A stretch of 64,000 nucleotides of DNA, from positions 14,260,001-14,324,000 of the forward strand of contig NC_092355.1 of assembly GCF_963676685.1 (NCBI RefSeq), written 5' to 3'. The position numbers and the translations under genes are program-made. Position 1 is the stretch's first letter. Every line of letters begins with the position of its first letter. The stretch comes from Mytilus edulis (taxonomy: Eukaryota). The notes under the pieces are model-generated. The model searched no databases and had not been told where the DNA came from. It saw nothing but the letters and a program-made list of their open reading frames with translations. Shown in pieces: positions 1,551 through 52,400 of the stretch.

Positions 1551-1693
1551 TTAGGGGCCAGTTGAAGGACGCCTCCGGGTGCGGGAATTTCTCGCTACAT
1601 TGAAGACCTGTTGGTGACCTTCTGCTGTTGTTTTTTTTCTATGGTCGGGTTGTTGTCTCTTTGGCACATTCCCCATTTCCATTCTCAATTTTA
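1551..1693 (+). mobile_element. 3' tail fragment of repeat family A (same tail as 12605-13491)
   Basis: Reverse complement of about 12605-12747. Further copies at 34536-34655(-), 49392-49629(+) and 63906-64000(-). Confidence 0.8.
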
Positions 1694-11233: not shown

Positions 11234-12849
11234 ATTTAAAAAAAAACAGTAAACGAATTTCTGGCAAGACGATACATACCGCCGTCATTTTTAATATTGG
11301 CAAGTAGGTGTTCTTCTGGTAATAGAAGTAACAAAAGTTCCTCTAAGGAAAATTAGAGTAAACGAGGAGCACGACCCCACACTGACGCTAGGCCATAACT
11401 TGAATAACGCTTCCTCGGTACTCGGAGGATAAAATTCAAAACTAGTAACAGTGATGAATTGGCCGCTCTGGTAAACAAGAGAAAGCCGTTTATAAAAAAC
11501 ACAACTTTCCTGTGGTACCACAGGAGAATATTGCAACATATGGTCTAACGTAGAATTATAGGGTCATGACCCCCTGTCATCTTGCCAGATCCCGCCTCTG
11601 CACTAATAGTGCGACAACTGTTTTATTAAAGATAATAATAAAAAAACAATGAAAAATATCAAAATGCATTAAAAAGAAATCCTTTTTTTGAAACGCACAC
11701 ATCTATATGTTTATACAGTTGAATTCTAGAAATTAAAGTTTTCTCCTTTCTTAGTAAACGTCCCCCATCAAGACATCAGCAGATTATAAGATGCGTAAAA
11801 ACTAGCACTGTCTGTTTGAAATCAGTATCATGCAGGTATTTATATAAAAATTTTCCATCCTCAATTTAAAAGCATTCGGAAAAACGTGAAATTGTAATAA
11901 CAGTTCACGATAAAACTGGATACAACCACTGCAATATTATTTTATTCTAGACAAGTAGAAAAGTTCATCCTCTACACTAATTGCCATACTCCATTTAGTC
12001 CGAAAATCAATTGTCTCCAGCTGGATCAGTTTCCGGTCTTCCTAAACTCACTAGGCATATACTTGAAAAACATTAACAAACAACAGCAGAAAAAATATTC
12101 CAAAATAGGAGATTGTCGGGGTAGGTGGGTGGGATTGAACAAGCTTCCCGTTCAAACGTTAGAAAATTTGGAAGTGACGTCACAATACGCTAAAGTCACA
12201 TGACAGACACGGTCAAAGTTCAGAATGCAAAGATACAAGGGGGAACTCGAGAATTGATACGGAATTATAACTTTTATTAAACCTGTATTATCAGTAAACC
12301 GATAAACATTATTAATTAAAGATTAAAATAATTCAAGAAATAATGTGTGGAATCAAACCGGCCGCATACGGTAAATGTTTTGCTCATTGCTGAAGGTTGT
12401 ACGGTTACCTTTAGATGCTAATACCAACGTTGTTTGTATAATTGAGTTGTCTCATAGGCGATCATTCCGCAACTCCTTAAAACTAAATAAAAGATTGCTT
12501 GAATATAATGCTGGTATATGGAAATTACAAATAAAATAGAACAGCTATAGTTAAAACCCCTGACAACAAATTGATTTTTAAACGTTCGAAAATTCTTAAA
12601 AGATAAAATTGAGAAAGGAAATGGTAAATGTGTCAAAGCGACAACAACCCGACCATAGAGCAGACAACAGCCGAAGGCCACCAATGGGTCTTCAATGTAG
12701 CGAGAAACTCCCGCGCACTTGTAGGCGTCCTTCTGTTGGCCCCTTAAAAAATATGTATACTAGTACACTAGAAAGTGATAATGATCGTCATACTAAACTC
12801 CGAATTATACACAAGAAACTTATATTAAAAATCATACAAGACTAACAAA

Positions 12850-12940
12850 GGCCAGAGGCTCCTGACTTGGGACAGGCGCAAAATTGCGGCGGGGTTAAAC
12901 ATGTTTATGATATCTCAACCCTCCCCCTATACCTCTAGCC
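12850..12940 (-). ncRNA. Twister-ribozyme-like motif, circularly permuted (type P5), core intact
   Basis: GGCUAGAGG..GGGG-GA-GGG..AACAUGUU-U^AA-CCCC-GCC-[GCAAUUUUGC]-G-CCUG-UCCCAAGU-CAGG-A-G-CCUCUGGCC. Matches twister P2, P4, T1 (GGG/CCC), T2 (GC/GU) and the catalytic G and A. Confidence 0.75.
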
Positions 12941-13137
12941 AATGTAGAAAAGTAAACGCATAACAATACGCACATTAAAATTCAGTTCAAGAGAAGTCCG
13001 AGTCCGATGTCAGAAGATGTAACAAAAGAAAATAAATAAAATGACAATCATACATAAATAACAACCGACTACTAGCAGTTAAGTGACATGCCAGCTCCAG
13101 ACCTCAATTAACTGATTGAAAGATTATGTCTTCATCA

Positions 13138-13198
13138 TATGAATATCAGGCACAATCCCTCCCGTTAGGGGTTTATTATCATACTATCATAAAATATG
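13138..13198 (-). promoter_or_regulatory. Type II SECIS-like element
   Basis: CAUAU-uuu-AUGA-uaguaugauaau-AAA-CCC cuaac GGG-ag-ggauugugcc-UGAU-auuc-AUAUG, ~65 nt after the ORF stop at 13258. Confidence 0.6.
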
Positions 13199-13644
13199 TG
13201 AGAAGAACATAACCCGTGTCATGCCAACAACTGTTTTTTTTTTTTAAATAAATGTGTTTAGTTCCGATGCAAAGACCCTATAAGTGAATCAATATTAAAG
13301 CCAAAATATGCAATCTTTAATGACCTGACAACAGTATCGTAACTATATCCCTTCTTTATAAGTCTGTTTAAAGGTTTTGCAAGCTTTTGAGGTGAATACT
13401 GACATTTTTGTGCTTTGTAAAGAATATTACAATAAAAGATTGGATGTGAAATATCTGAACGTATAAGATGTCTGCATGATGAGTTATATGTTCAAAATGA
13501 TGGTCGATATTTGATGAATTATGAAGTTAATCTAAAAATATAAAGCAGCTTAGAGTCCTCATTATTTTCGAAAAATGTTAAATGTTTGATATTTCTTCAT
13601 AACGTTTAGTGACCCAACCACTGTCGATACTGCCTATAATACAT

Positions 13645-16354: not shown

Positions 16355-19300
16355 GTTTGTAAATACAAATTTTAATGTCAAATTATTCTTAAAATCATCA
16401 ATAAGATATCGATTTTAAATGGAAGATTTTATTTATTTTTAGAAGAACGGCGGATAGAAACCTTGGCAAAGCCTAAACGTGTACCAAGTGAATTTCAAGA
16501 TGACAGGTAAGAAATCGTAAGATGTAAACATGGCAAAAAAAGGGGGAGGTAAGCCACGTGTTTGTTGACGGTCTCAAACCACAATAATGTCACCTTAGAT
16601 CTAAAGATAGTTGTAGATAGTGTCTGTTTTCGTATTATAAAACACAGATTCGATTTTCTGAATTTGCAGACAAGGTGATGTATAAATGGTCTGTAGTTAC
16701 CGTACTTCAACATGCTATGGGTAGACCTTTTTTTGCATTGTACATACCTTGCAATGTTGGTATGAACAAGCCTTTCTATTGTACACCTTATAATATCTAT
16801 AGAATTTAGATATCATTATCAGCCAGGGATAAATTTAACATAAGGTTCCAATAAAGTCAAAATATAGGACACTTCCTAAGTTTACATCTAAACTTTGCCT
16901 TTATTTTTCAAAGCTATAATCAATTAAGTCCTAAACTATGGTAAAATATATTCATTTGAACATACTTAAGTGGGGGTAGGAGGGGTCCTGATCCCGAAAC
17001 CCTGGGCTTAAAAACACAAAATCCAGAGGTCCCGTAAAAAAGAATTTCCGGATCCTGAAATCCAGAGCTTAAAAACACCCGATCCCGGAGTCCTGATTAA
17101 GGTCCCATCCCCTCCTCATACTTACATATGCACACTGAGTCAATAAACTTGAAATTATTATATGTACAATGTACCTATACACATTATTTTGACTCTGAAA
17201 TATAGCATGTATACGTAGTCGGTGATTAAATAATTTAATTATGTAAGTACAAAGTCAAGAAAGGTTCAAATGTTCGAATGTTCACAAACTGTCTTTAAAG
17301 TTGAATTGTTCGAATGTTCAATATCTCACACGAGCACGTGATCGTATAGTGGTATAACTGTTCGAGTATTTCGGATATTAAGCGCATGAGTTCCAGCCTA
17401 CCCACGAGGGGGGAGACCTTGGCGGAATCTCCGTTACCAATCTGTCCTAATCGAATTCTCGTCTTATCGAATTGTTCCTGCTGATTAATGTATGGAACAC
17501 AATTGTGTAACATCTTGAGCCAGCCAGTCTTAATGCTTTTACTCCTAAGTCATATAAAAAAGAAGATGTGGTATAATTGCCAATGTGAGAACTATCCACA
17601 AAAGACCAAAATGACACAGACATTAACAAGTATAGGTCACCGTACGGCCTTTAACAATGAGCAAAGCCCATACCACATAGTCAGCTATAATAGGCCCCAA
17701 TAAGATAATGTAAAACAATTCAAACGAGAAAACTAACGGCCTTATTTATGTAAAAAAATGAACGAAAAACAAATATGTAACACATAAACAAATGACAACC
17801 ACTGAATTACAGGCTCCTGACTTCCAAGGGACAGGCACATACATAAATTATGTGGCGGGGTTAAACATGTTAGCGGGATCCCTCCCCTAACCTGGGACAG
17901 TGGTATAACAGTACAACATACATGTAAGAACGAATGCATCTTCAATCTTTGTCGTGATGACAGGTTATTTTCTCTTGTTAAATTGTTATCACTAATGTAG
18001 TTTCTCCTTTGTACTAAGATATTGTATGTGGCGCTTTAAAAATATTAAAGAATCAATGTATGAAGTGAAATTTTAAAAAAAAAGTTAAAAAAAAATACAT
18101 TTTGTAGTATCAAATTATTTACTAAAACAGTTTGTTTCCTCTATGTACTCTGCTAATAGTTGAGTGATATTCTCTGCATTTGGCAAATTGATTGTTAATA
18201 AATTGTCTAAATCTGTTGGAATTTGTCCTGTTATGAAGTAGATTTGATGAAATAATTTGTCTCTGGCATCTGAATACAGATCATGCATGCAACCAACCCC
18301 CTGCACTCAAACAACAAGACCAAGAAGTTGCTTCTATTGCAGTCTGCCCCAAATATTTTCCAACAGCTAGTCCCAAGACAAATATTCAGACATTTTCCTT
18401 TTGTGTCTAAACAGAGTTTTGCAAAAGTTTACTAATCCGAATAAAATTTTACTTGTCTAGGGCATTGAACTAATAGTTAAAGGTGCAGGCTGCTATTGGA
18501 TGCCTATTTAGTGAAGAAAGTTCTGTTTTCATGTTTAGTAGTAGGTAAAAAAAAGAACAGCTCTCCTATTGACAAGCTTTATCGTTTATGATTAAATACT
18601 GTTGTTAACACCTGTTGATATTTTTCTGAATGAGTTCCTTTAGTCAGATAGTATTATCCAGGGTATTTAACATATAATTACCTGTAATATAAACAAGTGC
18701 AGAATTTTATCTCTGAATCAAAGCAATAAAGTGATGTGGGGGAGATAGGCTTTTGTTCTCTTAATATACATTGTAAAATAACCGATAATTGTTGGAGCAT
18801 GTTCAACACTTTACATTCTGTTGATCGTAACGATGCAATTAGAGTGTCTGATTTATTTCGTAACTGAATTTTAATTGATTTATATGGGGCACCACTTGGG
18901 CCTTTTTAACAATTAAAAAGTTCTTATTTTTATAAAAGTCTGAAAATTATAGTTGCTCAATGAAATCATAGGTTACGGATGGTAGGTGATAACATTTGAG
19001 GAAAATATGTCTATGATAACATTTTGGTTTTCATAATTTAAATCAAACTCTTTTGGCACCCAGTCGCAAATTTATAATCTATAATCACTTTAGCATGTCG
19101 TACATGTATGTGTGGGACTTCTATATATATATTGTTTAACAGTGGGGTCTTAATGACTGTGGGAAAATGTACAGTTTATTGATCGTTTAATAATTACAGA
19201 TATGTTGCATAACATTTCAACTAAATTCAAACTATAAAAGTTCATGAAATGGAAAATTTTAAACTTGGGCTAATATTACTATATTGAAAAAAATTATAGA

Positions 19301-34406: not shown

Positions 34407-37400
34407 CTAAAACAGAAAAAATTGTGACATCAGTAATTTTTCTTTTTTTTACATATTTGTTTGTTTTTAGAGTGATTAAGATTATAACACAATTTTGACT
34501 GCTGTTTTTTTAATATTTTACCTATTATGTCTGTTTAAAATTGAGAAAGGAAATGGGGAATGTGTCAAAGCGACAACTACCAGACCATAGAATAGACAAC
34601 AGCCGAAGGCCACCAATGGGTCTTCAATGTAGCGAGAAACTCCCGCACCCGTAGGTGTTTGTTTTGTTCACACATGGTTGTAAATATAAATAGAATTTGA
34701 TGTGACTGTCATACAAGTGAGAGGTTTAGCTTGCTTAAAGAACAGGTTTAATCTCCCATTTTGTACATGAGAAAATGCCTGTACCAATTGAGGAATATGA
34801 CAGTTGTAATCCATTTTTTGATGTGTTTGTGCATTTATGCCATATGATAAGGGACTTTCCTTTTGAATTTCCCTCAGAGTTTAGTATTTTTGTGATTTTA
34901 CTTTTTATTACTAATTTTCTGACCAAGTCTCTTTTGCTTGCTGCCTTATCACTTGATATAACGTATCAACATATTTTATAGGAGCAACACCATGGATTTC
35001 ACATGTGGAACAGGATCAGCTTACCCTTTCCTTGCATCTTAGTTCTACCTCAGTTTTTTGTTGGTGTTCGTGTTGCTCAAGTCTTTATTTTTTCATGTTG
35101 TGTTTTGTATACATATGGTTGTTTTCCTTTAGAATTTTCACTGTTTGCCATGGCGCTTTTAGTCAATTTGTTTTTAACTTATCAGTTTAAATGTCCCTTA
35201 ATTTACTAAAATATTAATTACTGACATGGTATATATTTTTTTAAGTATGGAAAATTGCATGTATAATACAAAAACAAACTAACAACTATTCACTAATGTT
35301 AACTAGGCTGGGGTAAGGAAGTTAACGTTACCAGTTTTCCAACTAACAAATGTACAGATTTCAATAAAATATAATTTTAAAAAAAAAGTAAAATTATAAA
35401 AAATATTACTTTCTTCACAACAATGATTAAAGATAATGATTGGTGTTATAAATGGCTGTTTTATGACCAGTACAACATCAAATGTAGGACAAGAATATGT
35501 TATGTGATAGGAATAGAAACCCTGAGACACTTAGTCTGATTTTCAACTTGCTAGCTTTCAAGATAATAGCGTGGCTTTTGTTGATTTATTGAGGTAGACC
35601 TTTGTTCAAGGAAACTACTCTTTAAAACATCAATACCTTTGTGTCAACCTTTTTCATATATATATATAATATATTCTAAGCTTCTAGGTTACAAAGAGTA
35701 TTTCCAATCTGTTTTTATAGGTAATTGCTTAAATGCTTTGATGAAACTTGACTTTTTTAAAAGCACAACTGATATAAAGAGTTATCTCCCTGAACCAAGG
35801 TCTACCCCCTTAGTAAAAGTTACATTTTTGGTAACTTGATTTTATGGTTCAACTGAAGTACACTAAAATACACAAATAATAACTAAATATGTAGTGTTCT
35901 TCTTTAGCAGTGTTTAAAGGGGGATCTTTACTCTCATAATTCATGGTTCCCACTAAGGATTTTAGAAGGTGGGTCCAGGGACTCATCATTTTTGGTCATG
36001 GTGAGACCGACAGTAACAACAAGATATTCTATTGTAATTTTATTTATTATTGATTTAAAGACTGTGATTTTAAAAATCTTCACTCCCCCCTAGCTTCATG
36101 ACAAAGTTTTAATACAATTTTTACTGTGTATACCTTTAATGACTGTGATTTCAAAAATCGTCTCTCTACCCTAGCTCCATGAGGAAGTTTTAATACTATT
36201 TTGACTGTATCAGGATCAGTAGAATTAGGCTCTGCAGGTATTTCAGTTTTTAATACTTCCTTTCTGTCTTCTTTTGCCTAAATATAAAATTGCAAATAAA
36301 TTTATTTTAATTTTTTATAGTCACAAAATGCATTTTAATATATATGGTAAATGGATGTTTGCTACTTTTCAGGTATTTCCTTGCATCTGATGGTACTATT
36401 TGTTGTGATTTCTTTTGTTTTTAGAGGACTCATTTATTTTCATCGATACCAATATTTTTAGGATTGAAGATAACTGCTATTTTTGTGGAATTTTTTTAAC
36501 TGCTCCTGAGAATATCATGCTGAACAGTTTTTATTGGTGTAGGTAGCCTGAGTACATGATATACATGGGGTAAGAAACTTGACGATCCTTGTCAATAAAC
36601 ATCAGAATCAAAGGCTCTCTGCAACAAGCTGAATTTGAACTCATGACAGACTTAATATCCCTGTAGATAAAACACTTAGATCACACCAGGGCTTCCAAAA
36701 AATATTTGAGCCAGCCGGACATTTCATATCTGATCCCGATTTTTAATTCCTTAAGACTTAGTCACAAAAGGCAATTATGGTAATCAGATGGCCATTCCAA
36801 TGATTGACATTACATTAAAAAAAAACGATTTTAAACTTTACTTTGATATGATATGAATTTGATGTTCGGATGTAACTGTTAAATTGGCAGTGCATCATTT
36901 AAAGTGTGCACATCAGCGTGCGCATATCTGCCTTGGACTTTTTATTTGTGTAAAAACTTTAGTTTCGTTTTCACATTGTTCTAACCGGATGTTGACTAGA
37001 CAATGGTAAAACATGGACCATAAACGGATACGTAAAATCCATGTATGTTTTACAAAGCACGACTGAGTGAAGAAGCTCTTTCCACGTTATTTCTTCAACA
37101 AAATACTTGAAATGAACGTTAGATACTTTTGGCATTTTTGAAGAAATGTAGGATGCATAATTAAATTTCCCACCTGTGCACATGCACACACATGTTCTTG
37201 TTCATACGACGTAGTTCTGACGATTTTTCATTTAAAACCTTTTTAAATTTTTCATCAAATCATGTTGATAAACTTAATTCTAATGTTTTAATCTTTTGGA
37301 CTAAATCAATTAGAAACAAACCGCTGAAAAGTAAGAAAAAAATTGTGAATAGACCGATCAATTTATACGATGTCCGGTACTGAACATGGTTCACCTGTCA

Positions 37401-43400: not shown

Positions 43401-46400
43401 CATATCGAGTTGATACCTCTCTAATGAAAAGAAAGTGCTCTGGTTATGTACACCCTATATCTGTTTTCATTCATGATCAATCAAATAAATGATCCTTTCT
43501 TTTTCTTTTTTTTAAACAATATCCTCCAAACTCTGATCAGTCTAGGCCTTTACAGTATATTGCTGTTATTGTGTTCCAGGTTAGAGGAAGTGTTCAGCTC
43601 ACACAAGCATATTTAAAACCTCTATATTCCTTAAGAAAGAGCCTGTCGAAAGACCCTGTAATTTGATGCTTCTCCTTGATTTACTTATCATTTATAGTGT
43701 TATTTTAAATTAGATTGTTAGTTTTCTCATTTTAATTGAGGTCTTTTATAGCTTATTATATGCATAGGCGGATCCAGGAGGGGCCCCCCTTTCGTGGGAA
43801 AAATTTGGTTGATTATAAAGGAAATCACTGAAGCATGACTGGAGCCCCCCTCCCTTAGGTCAGTCTCAGCCCCTGAGGTTGTTAAAATTCATAATATGGC
43901 ATGTGGGTTTCGACTGCAATTTTAATTGAATAGGATAGCCAGTTTTCCTGTCATCTTTGTCTTTGGGCACTCTACTTCTTTCACTTGTAAAACTTGACTG
44001 CCACAAAATTGTAATTAATGTTGAACGTGGCATTAAATACACTACTAACTTACCCCTGTATCCTTCAGGACTGTTAGTATTACAGGACCAAAATAACATA
44101 CTACTATTTATAAAGTCTATCACATCATTATTCCCTAACGTATTTCTGAAAATAAATAATACATGGCAAATGATATTTCGGAAGAAAAAAAATTATTGTT
44201 ATCTATTTCCATCCGGGGTTGTAAGACATATAAAACATTTAAAATATGATATTTTTTTTTTCAATCATTAATGAATTTAAAAGTGAAATAGTGAAATGAT
44301 TATTCCCTTTTAGCAGACAGTATGGTTGAATTTTGTCACTTGCAAGTGAATAATTCAACCTCATTGAATTCCTATTCATGTGACCTTCAATATAACTCCT
44401 AACCTAGAGGTAAATTAAACAATTCATGTGTGTTCAGTATTTGATGGAAAAAGAATGTCAACATTGAATATGAAACAAAGGTATTTCAATTGATAGACTA
44501 ATTGGATCCACAAAATTGCATTCATATACAGGTAAGTACGACAGTTAACTAATTTCTTTAACCTATAAACATGAAATAAAACAGACATACAAAAATCCAA
44601 TTGCACAAAGTTGCTATCTATGTATATTTATGTTTATATTTTGTTATGTGACTGTCATCAGTTTTTTTATAGTTGATTAGATGGTGTCTAGACTAAAATA
44701 CACAGGAAACTCTGATATATATATTATTTAGTATATGCATTGAAACTGTTTATTTCAGACTTATTGTAATTTGGATATGTGTGTTAATAGTACATGTATG
44801 TTATAAATCAAATATATATGAGAGTTTCAGGTCAAATTTGTTTTTAACAGCTAGTGCCCCTTTGATAAAACTGTTAATTTAGAAATTTTAAGAAAATTTT
44901 AATAATTTCACAAATAGAAACAATATAGGTACTTCAAAATCAACCAGATGCTCCGCAGGGTGTAGCTTTATACGACCGCAGAGGTTGAACCCTGAACGGT
45001 TGGGGCAAGTATGGACACAACATTCAAGCTGGATTCAGCTCTAAATTTGGATTGTGATTAAATAGTTGACACAGCATAGGTTTCTGACACAGAATGAATG
45101 TGTTCTAATGAACTTAAAATTTTTTGTTTTCTCTTAGAGCAATTCACTATGCTGTTGAATATTAATCCTCTCAAAACAAGAATGTGTCTTCAGTACACGA
45201 ATGCCCCACTCGCACTATCATTTTCCATGTTCAGTGGACCGTGAAATTGGGGTAAAAACTCTAATTTGGCATTAAAATTAGAAAGATCATATCATAGGGG
45301 ACATGTGTACTAAGTTTGAAGTCGATTGGACTTAAACTTCATCAAAAACTACCTTGACCAAAAACTTTAACCTGAAGCGGGACAGACGGACGGGCGAACG
45401 AATGGACAGACGGACGGACAGACGCACAGACCAGAAAACATAATGCCCCTCTACTATCGTAGGTGGGGCATAAAAATGTTTGAAGAAATTTTCTTTTTTA
45501 TTTATGAAATTTCAAATGAGAAAAATTGAACCCAATTTTTTTAATCACATCCCCCTTTCCCTTATTCCAAAACTAATCTCAATTAAAATTTCTAATGGAG
45601 TTTGCAACAATAACTACTCATTTAAATACATCATAAAATATTAAGATGTAAAAAAAAACTGCTTGTTATCACTGAATGTTATTTATTATAATTTATCAGT
45701 TGGTAGTAAAAAGTGAATATACATTGTATATTGTATATAACAAAGATTTAAGTTGATTCTGGACAAAGAAAGATAACTCCAATTAAAAAAAATCTTGCTA
45801 TTGCACAATATTTTGCAATAAGATATTTCTTGCTTACTATTCTGGACAAAGAAAGATAACTCTAATTAAAAAAAAATTTGCTATTTCACAATATTGTGCA
45901 ATTAGATATTTCTTGCCATTGCGCAATACTGTGCAATTGAAAAGACTTGATATTGCACAACACTTAATATAATAATTTTAGATCCTGATTTGGACCAACT
46001 TGAAAACTGGGCCCATAATAAAAAATCTAAGTACATTTTTGGATTCAGCATATCAAAGAACCCCAAGATTTCAATTTTTGTTGAAATCAGACTAAGTTTA
46101 ATTTTGGACCCTTTGGACTTTAGTGTAGACCAATTTGAAAACAGGACCAAAAATGAAGAATCTACATACACAGTTAGATTTGGTATATCAAAGAACCCCA
46201 TTTATTCAATTTTTGATGAAATCAAACAAAGTTTAATTTTGGACCCCGATTTGGACCAACTTGAAAACTGGGCCAATAATCCAAAATCTAAGTACATTTT
46301 TAGATTCAGCATATCAAAGAACCTAACTGATTCATTTTTTGTCAAAATCAAACTAAGTTTAATTTTGGACCCTTTGGACCTTAATGTAGACCAATTTGAA

Positions 46401-49400
46401 AACGGGACCAAAAGTTAAGAATCTACATACACAGTCATGACAGTTAGATTCAGCATATCAAAGGACCCCAATTATTCAATTTTGATGAAATCAAACAAAG
46501 TTTAATTTTGGACCCTTTGGGCCCCTTATTCTGTTGGGACCAAAACTCCCAAAATCAATACCAACCTTCCTTTTATGGTCATAAACCTTGTGTTTAAATT
46601 TCATAGATTTCTATTTACTTATACTAACGTTATGGTGCGAAAACCAAGAAAAATGCTTATTTGGGTCCCTTTTTGGCCCCTAATTCCTAAACTGTTGGGA
46701 CCTAAACTCCCAAAATCAATACCAACCTTCCTTTTGTAGTCATTAACATTGTGTTTAAATTTCATTGATTTCTATTTACTTAAACTAAAGTTATTGTGCG
46801 AAAACCAAGAATAATGCTTATTTGGGCCCTTTTTTGGCCCCTAATTCCTAAACTGTTGAAACCTAAACTCCCAAAATCAATCCCAATCGTTCTTTTGTGG
46901 TCATGAACCTTGTGTCAAAATTTCATAGATTTCTATTAACTTAAACTAAAGTTATAGTGCGAAAACCAAGAAAATGCTTATTTGGGCCCTTTTTGGCCCC
47001 TAATTCCTAAAATGTTGGGACCAAAACTCCCAAAATCAATACCAACCTTCCTTTTGTGGTCATAAACCTTGTGTTAAAATTTCATAGATTTCCATTCACT
47101 TTTACTAAAGTTAGAGTGCGAAAACTAAAAGTATTCGGACGCCGGACGACGACGACGACGCCGACGCCAACGTGATAGCAATATACGACGAAAAAATTTT
47201 CAAATTTTGCGGTCGTATAAAAACTGGATTTTTAAAATTTTTATAGCATTATCATTTGCAATTCTAAATCATATTCAACATCAAAATCAAACAAACTATT
47301 GCAGTATATGAAATACCTATTCATTGAGCTGTACGTATAGATTTAAATTAGGTATGGTAGTAAGATCAAAATTATTAAATTACATCCAACCGATAGTAAA
47401 ATATCAGAATGTCAACAAATAATATCAAATGGAAGCTTTCATGTGACATGTATTAAATACAAGCAAAATTATCCGTGGTTTTCAGTCAAAAATGCAATAC
47501 ATACACAAAAAAGCTTACCAAATCATATGCAAAATAAAAATCATCATACAGTTTTTAGGGGCTGAGCCACGATATTTAAAAAGGGGCAGCTATAAAACAT
47601 TTTTTGATGATTTTGTGTAATAGTAGTCAAAATCAATATTTTGAATACATTGAAATGTAAATTAATTTTCCAAAGCTATTTGATAACAAACCTGCAGAAA
47701 TCTGGCGTATCCTGATGATTATCACCATGGAGATAAACCAACAGGAACCGTAACTCACTCTTGGCATCATTTAAAGCCTGCAAAAAAATATAATATATAC
47801 AATACAGTTTAGGTGGATTTCTTCCTATTTGTCAAAGGAGCTACATTTGTACTTACATTTAGTAAAGATATGATATGATCAGGCTTTAATGTATGAGATG
47901 TCTCCTATCTATGGCTGATTTATTTCCTGTTTCTTGATATTCATAACAGGGATATCTTAGTCAGAAATAGCTCATAGCTGTTTAGTAATGTAAACGAAAA
48001 GTTTTTTTTCTCAATGAGATATGAAACCGTATGGCACATTACAATAGAGGCAAAATGTATTGAATGAGGAGCTGACAATAGGTCTCATAATGTAACATGA
48101 ATTAATTTCTATACAATAAACAAACGAAAAATTCAGCTATATCCAGTTATAAAGGGGCATAACTCTAGGACAATAAAAGTGAGACCACCAAAATTCAAAC
48201 ATGATCTGTGTTTTGTGGTAATAAGCATTATGTATAAGTTTCATAACATTCTGTGGAGGCAAATTAAAGTTATTTTTGGGATGTACGGAGAGACGTTCAG
48301 ACCAACAGACGTACATGTGTTATAAGACGAGTTTACTTCTAGAGCATGATAATATGATCCTTTTTAATACCTGACTGTATGATCCCTGGTAAAATACTGG
48401 ATGGTCCTGTCCATATAAATCATTATATGTCTGTATAAATCTAGTAACATCACCAACAGGGTCTACTACATCTGGAAATGAACATTAGATTACAGAGCTA
48501 TAAATATACAATACTGAAGACTGGGTCAATCAAAAGTGTTTTTTCTAATGCAAAGGCCCTTATTATTTCAATATTCAAATTTATATTCTATAGATTATTT
48601 TTTTTTCATTTAATGCTGGAGTGAAAGATTTCTGGTATTGATCAAGCCTTATAATTTGGAATTTATAATTTTCTAATGCCAATTTTCCTGATGCAAAAAT
48701 TGCATTTTCATCAATAATTGAATTTCAGAATTTTATCCAATTTTGTATGCCAGCCTATAGGAAGTTAACCAATTATACTTACTTCTCCTTGGATCTTGTC
48801 GAAATAAACTCCCTGAAATAAAAGAAAATATACGACATTATTACATCAACAAAAAAATGCTGAATTCAAATGCAAATGCAAATCTGCCTCCTTCAGCAGA
48901 TTTGCATTTAAATTCAGCATCTTTTTTATACACTGATACCAATATACATACCTGTACATTTATATTGCAAACTGAATTTTAATTGTGAGTTATGATTGAA
49001 ATATCAAAGACCTGTTTATTCTTTAATTCAGGGTTAAAGCTTTGTAAAAAATCAAGACATAAAATGCTTTCTGATCAGTATCTTTCATAGAATAGAAATA
49101 GAGGGTGAAGAAATTATCACAATGAGCTGACAGAATGATCTAAGATAATTAATATGTTTTCTTTCACATTTCTAATGCTTAAATTTCTGTAAAATGTGTA
49201 CATTATTTTGCTACTTACAAATAAATGTTAAAATATCAGTAAAAGTTGTGTAAACAAATCTAAACGGAAACGCCATAAAAAAATATGTCCATTGAAATAT
49301 TCCTTGTGGTCTTCTACTAGCCACTGTAAATACCCTGAAAATACAAAAAGACAAATAAATGTATGAATCATTTATAATGAATACTGGGTTTGGCCTTTGT

Positions 49401-52400
49401 TAGTCTTGTATTATCTTAATTTTAGTTTCTTGTGTACAATTTGGAAATTAGTATGGCGTTCATTATCACTGAACTAGTATATATTTGTTTAGGGGCCAGC
49501 TGAGGGATGCCTCCAGTGCGGGAATTTCTCTCTACATTGAAGACCTGTTGGTGACCTTCTGCTGTTGTTTTTTCTATGGTCGGGTTGTTGTCTCTTTGAC
49601 ACATTCACCATTTCCATTCTCAATTTTATGACTGATGCTTAATCTTGAAAAAACATGGATAATTTTAGTAATTAGATCAGTAGATCAGTACTTTCAGTGT
49701 TTTCCTGTTTGAATGGTTTTATACTAAGTCTTTCTTGGGTCCCTGTATAGCTTGCTGTTCAGTGTGAGCCAAGGCTTTGTGTTGAAGACCGTACTTTGAT
49801 CTATAATGGTTAACTTTTACAAATTTTGCATTAGGTGAGAGAGTTGTCTAATACCACATCTTCTTATACCTAATTAGCCTGTATTCTAGTTTGATGTCAT
49901 TATCATACATACGTTATAAAGAAATATAATTTGAGAACTTAAAAAGTGAACCAACAAAATTTGAACTGGATCTGTGTTTTATGATAATAGGCAGAGTGTA
50001 TGAGTTTCATAAGATTTGGTTGAGGCACTAAATTTAGAGAACGGAAACCAATTTTGGGACGGACAAGGATAACACTTAATGCCCCGTCCCTATAATGGTA
50101 GGGGGCATAACAATACTTGCTACGTTGGGGTCCGAGTACTTCAAGTATTTCAGTCATTTATGGGTACATTTAACATGAATGAATAAAATTTTAAAAAAAG
50201 AACATAATGAATGAAGTTGTTAAATATGATATATGCCTTTTTGTGCTTCTTTGTTAAATATTTGTTTGTTTTTATTGTGATTAAGATACTTGTGGTACTT
50301 GTACCTTCTGTCATAATTGTTTCATGTGTTTATGATATTCTCGTATTCTTGTCTTTCATTTTTGAGCTACCAGTATTGTAAAACTTGTTTGGTGCTTGTA
50401 TTTCATTTTTGCTATGTGCTTAGTCTATGCCTTTTTATGTCTTTTTTTTGTTAAATATATGATGTGGCTCTGTACTTGTACATCCCTCCATTGTGTTATT
50501 GTACTATGGTTAACTTGTGTATTCTTGTCTTTAATTTTTGCTGATGTGCTTGGTTTAATGCCATTTTGTGCTTCTTTGTTACATATTTGTTTTTTAGTGA
50601 TTGGGATTGTAACACAATGTTGACTGCTGTATTTTTGATATGTTTACCTTTTATTTCTGTTTGTTTTGTTCACGCATGGAATTTGATGCGACTGTCATAC
50701 AAGTGAGAGGTTTAGCTAGCTATAAAACCAGGTTTAATCAACCATTTTCTACATCAGAAAATGCCTGTACCAAGTCAGTAATATGACAGTTGCTATAGCC
50801 ATTCTTGTAATGTGTTTTAGCTTTTGATTTTGCCATTTGATTTAACAGGGACTTTCGGTTTTGAATTTTCCTCAGAGTTCAGTATTGTTGTGACTTTAGT
50901 TTTTACCTATTAGTTAGTCTAACAGAAAACTAATTAATCATGCAGAACTTGTTTTTAATTATTTAATATGTCTTCATTTTTTCAATTCTTTGAATGTATG
51001 CAATATGTGGTAGTTGTCAACAATTGATAGGACATGCCATTATTTCTGATTGTATCATTAAGTCTTTGTCTCATTTGTGTCTGCCAAATAACATTTCTTT
51101 TCTGTTCAGTTGGCATACATTCTGTTTAATATCATTTTACATCAGTTATCAATTGAAATGAAGGTCAAGAAAAGGCACAAAATGGCAGAAATTTTTCATC
51201 ACTGAGTTAGAGTACAAACTGACCTTTGATCTGAAGGTTGAATGTTAACTGGAGGTGTTCTGGGTTCAGGAGGAGGTTGACTATAAACAGAAGGAACTCC
51301 CTCTTGTTCATTAAATGTGTCCTGCACTGCAGTCTGAAATATATAAACATTGTCATGATTATGCCATAATTTGTTTTTGTTTGCTTAATATTTCTTTACA
51401 TTTTGAAATTTGGTGTTTGTATGATCTAGGCATCTATTCTCTCTCTGTGAAATTTGCATTACAACCTGCCTCTACTTAGAATGGTTTAATTTATAACTTG
51501 CCTGTTGTTATTTGTTGATGTGGTCCATAAGTCTTTTTTGTATTTTTTTTTATAGATTAGACTGTTGGTTTTCCCGTTTGAATGGTTTTACACTAGTGAG
51601 TCATTTTTGGGGCCCTTTATAGCTTACTGTTAGATGTGAGCCAAGGCTCTGTGTTGGAGACCGTATTTTGACCTGTAATGGTTTTTCTTTAACAAATTGT
51701 TACTTGGATGGAGTGTTGTCTCATTGGCACTCATACCACATCTTCTAATATTTATAAAACACTTCTTAGTCTAAATTTTGACCCAAATTCTCTTTAAGAC
51801 TCAGAATAATAACACCAAAAAGGCAGTATTACAAATGTTTTTAAATATAGTATTCAATTTGTATGAAGCAAACTTTAGATGCGAAAATAAATTCTTAACC
51901 AAATGTCCTCTGGTGGAAGTTGATATTGGTATATATGTAATTGACATGTAACTTGTCTACATACATAAAAGTTATACTTGAATACAATTAAGGAATGACT
52001 GTAATATTTTTTCTGTCTATGAAGAAATAACATAAAAAATTTGGTGCACACTAAATAACGCTCGTAGCAGGTTATTTATCAGTGTTCACCACATTTCTCA
52101 TGTTATTTCGAATAGATAGAAAAAGTATTACAGTCATTTCTTATAATTTAATTCTAAATTCCATTTTAAACCGTAGAAAACCATGAAAAATTGTTGATGA
52201 CGTCACGGTCACATGACTAAATTATGTCTATGGGCTCATAACAAAATAACGTCAGCCAATCAGAAGATGCGTTACATCCAAAATTAAATTATTAAATGAT
52301 GGTCCCTGCAGTCAATGTAGTACACAGCATGTTTTATGATATGTCTCAAACTTGATTCTTATATAATTCAGTACTGTGGAATCATTTATTTTCTTGGGTT

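What the first reader, a model, noticed from the sequence alone, without database searches (positions are those of the whole stretch)
12850..12940. Permuted twister ribozymes shared by three different mollusc retro-derived repeat families
Seen: three sequence-divergent families (A 12850-12940 -, B 17798-17904 -, C 50691-50790 + and 34705-34804 +) keep one ordered core: [P5]-P2'-GA-GG(G/U)...U^AA-P2-(G/A)CC-[P3]-G-CCUG-U(C/A)CCAAGU-CAGG-A-[P5']. Known: this matches the twister consensus (rice twister UAACACUGCC..GCCGGUCCCAAGCCCGG..GUGGAGGG), opened at P5. Base changes are compensatory: T1 GGG/CCC vs GGU/ACC, T2 GC/GU vs AC/GU, P2 CCCC/GGGG vs UCA/UGA, and three different P5 and P3 stems. Inference: high-copy bivalve repeats usually treated as plain SINEs are twister-processed retroelements, using twister where Penelope-like elements normally use hammerheads. 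I do not know of this being described, but could not check the literature. Predicted cuts: 12897/12896 and 50735/50736.
Basis: partly seen in the sequence, partly recalled or inferred. Interest (0 to 1): 0.92.

Follow-up and report, generated by a model that had tools for sequence, protein, structure and literature searches.

The report
Twister ribozyme motif in Naiad retroelements
A very abundant mussel-type repeat carries a well-conserved twister self-cleaving-RNA motif, and its host is a Naiad Penelope-like retrotransposon, the one group of these elements reported to lack the usual hammerhead ribozyme; cleavage itself is not yet shown.

Summary
All four cited sites carry the ordered type-P5 twister core with an extra P3. 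The copies at 17798-17904 and 34705-34804 are mutated relics. I found a fifth relic at 43571-43650.

The interpretation needs one large correction. 'Family A' is not a SINE. It is the 5'-truncated 3' end of a ~4.0-kb Naiad-clade Penelope-like element (PLE). A near full-length copy has an N-terminal GIY-YIG, a CxC motif, a DKA motif, a C-terminal RT, in-frame UGA codons and a SECIS-like hairpin. The twister lies in its 3'UTR, about 320 nt after the stop codon and 294 nt before a sharply fixed 3' end. B (438 bp) and C (at least 360 bp) are short ORF-less elements that share only the twister block with A.

The same module follows Naiad ORFs that are only 36% identical in protein. There it is the only alignable 3'UTR segment.

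Covariation supports P2, P3, P5 and both pseudoknots. GGG/CCC versus GGU/ACC in T1 never mismatches between lineages.

Against: every Rfam score is below its gathering threshold, there is no P1, and copy 5' ends do not pile up at the cut site.

Craig et al. 2021 state that Naiads lack hammerheads. No paper in the searched library links Naiads with twister. Other first-stage notes of this scan flagged the same motif elsewhere in this genome.

The parts
12603..13491 (-). 5'-truncated copy of a Naiad-clade Penelope-like element ('family A'): last 77 codons of the ORF, 3'UTR and fixed 3' end
   Evidence: Other copies extend further upstream into an RT ORF. 5' ends are scattered and the 3' end is constant. 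The 77-aa ORF end has 14,602 first-look candidates in the genome, many in 480-aa open frames and in tandem at 4031 bp.
13261..13491 (-). C-terminal 77 codons of the Naiad ORF, up to the stop codon
   Evidence: Homologous to the end of the L136 ORF.
13136..13198 (-). SECIS-like hairpin in the 3'UTR
   Evidence: Rfam SECIS_1 at 28.6 bits (gathering 35), E 0.0007 in 251 nt. The same element scores 30.9 bits in L136 and 28.0 in L215.
12850..12940 (-). Type-P5 twister motif with P3 (family A). P5 12940-12932 / 12858-12850; P2' 12927-12924; GA 12923-12922; T1 GGG 12921-12919; L1 with palindrome 12918-12898; predicted cut 12897/12896; AA 12896-12895; P2 12894-12891; GCC 12890-12888; P3 12887-12878; P4 12876-12873 / 12864-12861; L4 12872-12865
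   Evidence: Twister-P5, 23.5 bits; 111 bits with R1.
17552..17920 (-). 5'-truncated copy of the 438-bp ORF-less element B
   Evidence: Full-length copies start 66 nt further upstream (L071 1435-1872) and 3' ends are shared.
17798..17904 (-). Damaged twister of the B copy (6-nt deletion at GA-GGG/L1, TTGG insertion in L4)
   Evidence: 61.8 bits. Intact family members.
50544..50906 (+). Copy of the short element C (at least 360 bp)
50688..50793 (+). C-type twister motif (T1 GGU/ACC, 12-bp P5, 7-bp P3), predicted cut 50735/50736
   Evidence: 23.1 bits.
34690..34907 (+). Second, 5'-truncated C copy. Its twister (34704-34804) has two substitutions in L4/P4
   Evidence: 21.5 bits.
43571..43650 (+). 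Fifth, degenerate B-like twister relic (P3/P4 largely deleted)
   Evidence: 21.2 bits, E 0.0005.

Best explanation
The motif is a genuine member of the twister ribozyme class: type-P5 topology, an added P3, and no P1. It is a conserved module of the 3'UTR of Naiad-clade Penelope-like retrotransposons. The window copy at 12603-13491(-) is a 5'-truncated insertion of such an element. Families B and C are short ORF-less elements that carry the same module and are probably mobilised in trans.

Shown: the fold is maintained by compensatory change across lineages whose proteins are only 36% identical. All catalytic and core nucleotides are kept. The host is a Naiad.

Inferred: the RNA self-cleaves at N^AA (12897/12896 in A). 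It would then play the part that hammerheads play in other PLE clades, namely cutting read-through or tandem (4031-bp unit) transcripts. The transposition template itself must stay uncut at this site, because every copy keeps the 294 nt beyond it.

Speculative: each lineage has a self-complementary stretch where P1 should be. This suggests cleavage may need two ribozyme copies pairing, as in the dimer-dependent PLE hammerheads.
For: Core and order.

Covariation on 42 sequences, including both pseudoknots, which were not part of the model: 93.6% of cells paired against 85.0 +/- 0.8 in shuffles; 10 of 16 pairs changed on both sides; 0 of 500 shuffles reach the observed values; slid controls give 28-47%.

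T1 is GGG/CCC in lineages A, B and F and GGU/ACC in C, D, G and I, with no mixed lineage.

P5 is 9-12 bp with a different sequence in each lineage: 3-8 of 2000 shuffles match it in the three lineages the test scored correctly (C, D1, F). B's inner 6-bp arm is not significant (220/2000), the A value was a script mis-parse, and the run stopped before D2, G, H and I. P3 also differs between lineages.

Minimum-free-energy folds recover P5, P3 and P4 in seven of the eight sequences folded; the L153 fold lacks P4.

Host: the ORF end lies in 480-aa frames and in 4031-bp tandems. L136 has an ORF of at least 1012 codons with GIY-YIG, CxC, DKA and YLDD. The relative P0079 has a weak N-terminal GIY-YIG match.

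The same module follows Naiad ORFs in L215, L167, L158 and L175. Between the L136 and L167 3'UTRs the only significant match (E below 0.01) is the 18-nt L4/P4 core. D, from another organism, matches C over the 79-nt twister only.

Type-P1 relatives with the same 17-mer score 43-54 bits on Rfam twister-P1, and copies of one of these families (family E) begin exactly at the predicted cut.

A dispensable P1, any base at -1 and bulges are tolerated in tested twisters (PMC11662667). Naiads lack hammerheads (PMC8557442). No hammerhead hit at E of 1 or less in L136, L167 or L215.
Against: No Rfam match reaches its gathering score: 23.5 against 37.6 for A, 22.3 for B, 18.6 for C, and nothing for D, F or G.

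No P1 helix can be drawn.

The younger C copies in my small sample have C at -1 and a bulged P2.

The 5' ends of about 65 A copies are scattered, with no excess at position 593/594. All copies run 294 nt past the cut. So there is no genomic footprint of cleavage.

The metagenome lineages were retrieved with a fixed P4/L4 17-mer, so P4 and L4 carry no independent information, and generality across Naiads is untested. Many rows in the covariation set are related copies, so counts are not independent events.
Confidence: 0.7

Rival explanations
1. The fold is conserved but no longer catalytic. It would be a former ribozyme kept as a structured 3'UTR element, for example for recognition by the element's reverse transcriptase or for RNA stability.
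For: Every inserted copy retains sequence on both sides of the cut, and there is no 5'-end pile-up there. P1 is absent. Rfam scores are sub-threshold.
Against: The positions needed only for catalysis are kept in all intact lineages: the GA before T1 and the AA after the cut. Type-P1 relatives with the same core show element 5' ends exactly at the cut. A missing P1 and bulges are tolerated by active twisters (PMC11662667).
Confidence: 0.15
2. One reading: B and C, and A as a 'SINE', are retrozyme-like elements whose cleaved or circularised RNA is the transposition intermediate.
For: Animal hammerhead retrozymes are now read as non-autonomous PLE derivatives (bioRxiv 10.64898/2026.07.22.740005). 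One C copy (L014) begins at the cut site.
Against: A is an ORF-bearing 4-kb element. A, B and C copies have fixed 3' ends and linear 5' truncation, not permuted ends. Only one of about 11 truncated C copies starts at the cut.
Confidence: 0.1
3. A conserved repeat core that resembles twister by chance, with no RNA-level function.
For: All Rfam hits are below gathering. A and B share the block by common descent.
Against: Compensatory changes occur in five helices, including two long-range pseudoknots. The core is retained between elements with 36% protein identity and otherwise unalignable UTRs. The pattern is 300-fold over chance in the window.
Confidence: 0.03

Closest known systems
Twister ribozyme, type P5 (Rfam RF02684, clan CL00120; Roth et al. 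2014)
   Same: Same order of elements, same conserved nucleotides (GA-GGG, N^AA, RCC, UCCCAAG-Y), P2, P4, T1 and T2. About 21 nt lie where the P1 hairpin sits.
   Different: It has an added P3, which the P5 model lacks. There is no P1 pairing; a palindrome sits there instead. P4 is CCUG/CAGG, and T2 ends in U (G.U or A-U). Scores are below the gathering threshold.
Hammerhead ribozymes in the pseudo-LTRs of Penelope-like elements (Cervera & de la Pena 2014; Lunse et al. 2017)
   Same: A small self-cleaving motif in the non-coding terminal part of a PLE that occurs in tandem. There may be a dependence on dimerisation. Function is unresolved.
   Different: A different ribozyme class. The host is the Naiad clade, reported to lack canonical hammerheads (PMC8557442).
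Twister variants at the 5' end of Perere-3/RTE non-LTR retrotransposons (Liu et al. 2021, PMC8501958; PMC7761336)
   Same: A twister-class ribozyme carried by a retrotransposon. Family E in the metagenome loci behaves this way and shares the same L4/P4 17-mer.
   Different: There the ribozyme is type P1, sits at the element's 5' boundary, and cleavage defines the 5' end. Here it is type P5, lies in the 3'UTR 294 nt from the 3' end, and leaves no end footprint.
Naiad PLEs encoding selenoproteins (Craig et al. 2021)
   Same: N-terminal GIY-YIG, CxC, DKA, C-terminal RT, in-frame UGA with a 3'UTR SECIS, 3.4-4.4 kb, very high copy number in bivalves.
   Different: That paper reports no ribozyme and describes Sec-Naiads in clams and spiders. 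Here a mussel-type genome has one, with a twister motif downstream of the SECIS.

Membership tests
Twister ribozyme class | Conserved core nucleotides in the right order (GA + GGN, N^AA, RCC, U-NCC-AAG-Y) | tested here: met
Twister ribozyme class | Helices P2 and P4 with supporting variation | tested here: met
   P2 occurs as CCCC/GGGG, CCAA/UUGG, CCAU/GUGG, UGCG/CGCA, and CCC or UCC with a bulged partner. P4 was fixed by the search pattern, so it is uninformative.
Twister ribozyme class | Pseudoknots T1 and T2 | tested here: met
   T1 is 89% paired, with UA:21 and GC:7 at the variable pair. T2 is 95% paired, with AU:23, GU:15 and GC:3. There is no mixed lineage.
Twister ribozyme class | Score at or above Rfam's gathering threshold | tested here: not met
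   0 hits at gathering. Best score is 23.5 against 37.6. No Rfam model combines the P5 opening with a P3.
Twister ribozyme class | P1 helix flanking the cleavage site | tested here: not met
   The 21-nt L1 has no 5'/3' complementarity. P1 is reported as dispensable (PMC11662667).
Twister ribozyme class | Site-specific self-cleavage giving 5'-OH and 2',3'-cyclic phosphate | not testable with these tools
Naiad clade of Penelope-like elements | N-terminal GIY-YIG endonuclease and C-terminal RT in one ORF | tested here: met
   The L136 ORF aligns to residues 74-970 of P0079 in one piece. Motifs IIYLLT..QYVGETGR and FRYLDD are present. P0079 has a weak GIY-YIG match.
Naiad clade of Penelope-like elements | CxC linker motif, and DKG changed to DKA | tested here: met
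   SCNCS at about residue 394 and VPADKAAN at about residue 522 of the L136 ORF.
Naiad clade of Penelope-like elements | Unit of 3.4-4.4 kb, tandem arrangement, 5'-truncated copies | tested here: met
   4031-bp spacing and scattered 5' ends.
Naiad clade of Penelope-like elements | No canonical hammerhead | tested here: met
   No hammerhead hit in the window or in L136, L167 or L215 at E of 1 or less.
SINE (Pol III head from a small RNA, LINE-type tail) | tRNA-, 5S- or 7SL-derived head | tested here: inconclusive
   ARAGORN finds no tRNA-like sequence in B or C copies or in the window. Degenerate heads could be missed. A is excluded outright because it carries an ORF.

The most novel reading that the evidence does not exclude
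Twister is the regular, ancestral ribozyme of the Naiad clade. It stands in for the hammerhead of all other endonuclease-bearing PLEs. It is activated only when two copies pair through the palindrome that replaces P1. If so, two unrelated ribozyme classes were recruited to the same place in one retroelement order, which would mean that self-cleavage is a required step of the PLE life cycle and not a passenger.
Probability: 0.35. Interest if true: 0.8.

Novelty: new variant of a known kind. Interest (0 to 1): 0.62.

Why it matters
Craig et al. 2021 noted that Naiads lack hammerheads yet are the most successful PLEs in bivalves. From that they raised the possibility that hammerheads merely parasitise PLEs.

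A conserved twister at the equivalent place would reverse that reading: the need for a self-cleaving RNA would be general, and only its class would differ.

It would also make this genome one of the richest known sources of twister sequences. The scan's figures are 410,408 rough first-look candidates, with the best 150 all nearly perfect.

It shows that standard Rfam annotation misses these motifs.

It gives a natural test case for twisters that lack P1 and may act as dimers.

It ties two short high-copy bivalve repeats to PLE 3'UTRs.

Tried and rejected
- Rfam at gathering thresholds on the window: nothing.
- Genome-wide search with RF02684: 31,236 candidates, none scored at E of 10 or less.
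- Rfam E-value scans of B, C, D, F and G loci: only weak twister-P1 hits for B and C.
- 5'-end pile-up at the cut site as a footprint of cleavage: none for A. D copies are scattered. One C copy of about 11 starts there.
- B subfamily with GA changed to AA and P2 mismatches as evidence that activity is not needed: rejected. Those copies share both flanks, so they spread as part of a larger unit.
- 'A is an 887-bp element': rejected. My first query simply ended at the window copy's truncation point.
- Pfam on ORF pieces: no significant RT or GIY-YIG hit on the window, L025 and L136 pieces. Classification therefore rests on homology and motifs.
- MAFFT alignment of all lineages put the C/D group out of register by 1-2 columns, so covariation was counted on a model-guided alignment. 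P5 could not be written as one column set because its register differs between lineages, so it was scored per lineage.
- The P5/palindrome shuffle script mis-parsed lineage A and stopped with an error before D2, G, H and I, so its numbers cover only B, F, C and D1.
- No supplementary files are held for PMC8557442 or PMC11662667.
- No paper mentions JYMV01. The core sequence appears in no paper in a relevant context.

Full report
**Observation**

For A, on the minus strand from 12940, the elements are:
- P5 GGCUAGAGG, paired with CCUCUGGCC at the 3' end
- P2' GGGG, then GA, then T1 GGG
- a 21-nt stretch (L1)
- U^AA, P2 CCCC, GCC
- P3 GCA..UGC, then G
- P4 CCUG/CAGG enclosing UCCCAAGU

This places the cut at 12897/12896. 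In C it falls at 50735/50736.

The shared 16-mer occurs three times in the window against 0.01 expected. Rfam at gathering thresholds finds nothing. In E-value mode on short stretches, A matches Twister-P5 over the whole model (23.5 bits, gathering 37.6) and C partly matches twister-P1 (17.8 bits). The window's B copy matches nothing.

A covariance model built from four intact copies (R1) recovers exactly the four sites plus a fifth relic at 43571-43650(+). The window's B copy carries a 6-nt deletion and a 4-nt insertion. The 34.7-kb C copy has two core substitutions.

**What the repeats are**

Family A is not an 887-bp element. My first query ended at the window copy's own truncation point.

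The first 231 nt of the copy (13491-13261, minus strand) are the last 77 codons of an ORF. That ORF end has 14,602 first-look candidates in the 1.37-Gb genome. Many lie in 480-aa open frames, and some lie in tandem at exactly 4031 bp. Upstream pieces in other loci show RT motifs.

A metagenome contig, L136, holds a nearly complete copy. Its features are:
- an ORF of at least 1012 codons bounded by TAA/TAG, with four in-frame TGA codons; the last TGA lies 480 codons before the stop, which explains the 480-aa frames
- a GIY-YIG motif near the N-terminus, a CxC motif, DKA in place of DKG, and YLDD near the C-terminus
- a single unbroken alignment to residues 74-970 of a 996-aa relative that has a weak N-terminal GIY-YIG match

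These are the diagnostic features of the Naiad clade of Penelope-like elements described by Craig et al. 2021 (PMC8557442).

A SECIS-like hairpin lies between the stop codon and the twister. It scores 28.6 bits in the window and 30.9 and 28.0 bits in L136 and L215.

Copies have scattered 5' ends. Their 3' end is sharply fixed...CTCAATTTTAT, with unique flanks. The twister lies about 320 nt after the stop and 294 nt before that end.

B is a 438-bp element with defined ends; the window copy is 5'-truncated. C is at least 360 bp. Neither has an ORF nearby in my sample or a tRNA-like head that ARAGORN detects.

B shares one collinear block with A, 135 nt at 73% identity, covering the twister and about 55 nt upstream. 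C shares only the 18-19-nt L4/P4 core with A and B.

Model R1 gives 410,408 rough first-look candidates genome-wide. The best 150 all score at least 110.7 bits.

**Is the fold under selection?**

A scan of public metagenome contigs for the 17-mer gave 120 stretches. They include:
- copies nearly identical to the window genome's A and B families (L136, L116, L183, L169)
- a related element F (L215; ORF 78% identical to L136)
- a large family D from an unidentified organism (JYMV01 contigs)
- element G (L167; ORF 36% identical to L136)

In L215, L167, L158 and L175 the twister again follows the end of a Naiad ORF on the same strand. Between the 3'UTRs of L136 and L167 the only significant match (E below 0.01) is the 18-nt twister core. 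D and C, from different organisms, align over the 79-nt twister at 80% identity and nowhere else of note.

Lineage by lineage:
- T1 is GGG/CCC in A, B and F, and GGU/ACC in C, D, G and I, with no mixed case.
- T2 is G.U or A-U.
- P2 is CCCC/GGGG in A, B and F. In C and D it is 3 bp with one bulged pyrimidine, with U-A against C-G at the first pair. The model found this register on its own.
- P3 and P5 have a different sequence in each lineage and still pair. P5 is 9-12 contiguous bp. In the three lineages the shuffle test scored correctly (C, D1, F), 3-8 of 2000 shuffles match it. B's inner 6-bp arm alone is not significant (220/2000), the A value came from a mis-parse, and the script failed before D2, G, H and I.

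On the 42-sequence model-guided alignment, with the pseudoknots added by hand, 93.6% of cells pair against 85.0 +/- 0.8 in shuffles. Ten of 16 pairs change on both sides. No shuffle of 500 reaches the observed values. Sliding the partners gives 28-47%.

The nested helices were fitted to the model, which favours them. The pseudoknots were not. Many rows are related copies, so these are counts, not independent events. Minimum-free-energy folds recover P5, P3 and P4 in seven of the eight sequences folded; the L153 fold lacks P4.

**Does it cleave?**

This is inferred, not shown.

For:
- Every nucleotide needed for catalysis is kept.
- McKinley et al. 2024 (PMC11662667) report that any base at -1, bulges and imperfect helices are tolerated, and that P1 is dispensable.
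- The type-P1 relatives with the same 17-mer score 43-54 bits on Rfam twister-P1.
- Copies of one of these type-P1 families (family E, in gutless-worm metagenome contigs) begin exactly at the predicted cut, with unique upstream flanks. This is the pattern shown experimentally for Perere-3 (PMC8501958).

Against:
- There is no P1.
- All Rfam scores are sub-threshold.
- The 5' ends of A copies show no excess at the cut.
- Every copy keeps the 294 nt downstream of the cut, so the RNA that was reverse-transcribed was uncut there.

**Likely mechanism**

Most likely the module does in Naiads what hammerheads are thought to do in other PLEs: it cuts read-through or tandem-array transcripts (inference). 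The copy near the 3' end of a transposition template must remain uncut.

Where P1 should be, each lineage has a self-complementary stretch:
- UGAGAUCUCA in A
- UGGGAUCCCA in B and F
- UAGCUAGCUA in C
- GGCGCC or GGCGCGCC in D2 and G

Next to the cut, AACAUGUU (A, B) and AACC-A-GGUU (C) are also self-complementary. The change from GAGAUCUC to GGGAUCCC keeps the symmetry.

This recalls the dimer-dependent hammerheads of PLEs (Lunse et al. 2017, cited in PMC6765202). It could explain how a lone RNA stays intact while tandem transcripts are cut. This is speculation. A first-stage note (s1-832599) raised the same idea.

**Comparison with the literature**

- Twisters in retrotransposons are known at the 5' end of Perere-3/RTE elements (PMC8501958; PMC7761336).
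- Twister candidates in bivalves were predicted, but only type-P1 forms and without a link to transposable elements (PMC11662667).
- Craig et al. state that Naiads lack canonical hammerheads, and from that they question whether hammerheads matter to PLEs.
- No paper in the searched library contains both 'Naiad' and 'twister'. The core sequence appears in none in a relevant context. Subscription-only papers are not covered.

I therefore file this as a new variant of a known kind: a PLE-plus-ribozyme system with twister in the hammerhead's place. Cleavage and generality across Naiads still have to be tested.

Other first-stage notes of this scan flagged the same motif in other windows of this genome (s1-834635, s1-835468) and the ORF-end/SECIS/twister cassette here (s1-832375).

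Noticed in passing
window 13136-13198(-); L136 1018-1082(-); L215 614-678(-): SECIS-like hairpin in the Naiad 3'UTR (28-31 bits, gathering 35), together with four in-frame TGA codons in the L136 ORF, one replacing the Cys of the GIY-YIG 'LTC' motif. This looks like a selenoprotein-encoding Naiad in a mussel-type genome. Craig et al. 2021 reported these in clams and spiders.
   Followed up: partly
L112, L118, L143, L157, L173, L154, L155, L135, L210 (gutless-worm metagenome contigs): Type-P1 twisters with P3 and the same L4/P4 17-mer (Rfam twister-P1, 43-46 bits). Each copy begins exactly at the predicted cut (N^AACCAAGCC) with unique upstream flanks, as for the 5'-terminal twister of Perere-3.
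   Followed up: partly
literature lead (PMC4758252): The ~70-nt 'LINE-promoter' head shared by LP-SINEs of molluscs and by Nimb-17_LMi, I-3_DR and RTE-9_CPB may be a 5'-terminal twister of the kind above. The sequences are only in figures, so I could not check.
   Followed up: no
window 12918-12898(-) and equivalents in B, C, D, F, G: Self-complementary stretches of 6-10 nt where P1 should be, different in each lineage, plus a second palindrome abutting the cut site. They exceed shuffles in A, F and C (23-55 of 2000), less so in B (112 of 2000).
   Followed up: partly
G000 C8:90026928, 90030499, 90034068, 90037640: C/D-type twister hits spaced about 3570 bp apart: probably a second tandem Naiad-like family in this genome carrying the GGU/ACC type.
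   Followed up: no
window 49391-49629(+), 1553-1693(+), 34536-34646(-): Further fragments of the family-A 3' tail (more strongly 5'-truncated Naiad insertions). One lies head-to-head next to the C copy at 34.7 kb.
   Followed up: no
L062-L090 (B1/B3 copies): Many B copies share identical flanks on both sides and carry P2 mismatches or GA changed to AA. They spread as part of a larger repeated unit, not by their own retrotransposition.
   Followed up: partly
L014 about 1895-2059; L021 about 1163-1305: Truncated C copies inserted directly after the ...AATTTTAT end of an A copy. In L014 the C copy begins at its own predicted cut site.
   Followed up: no
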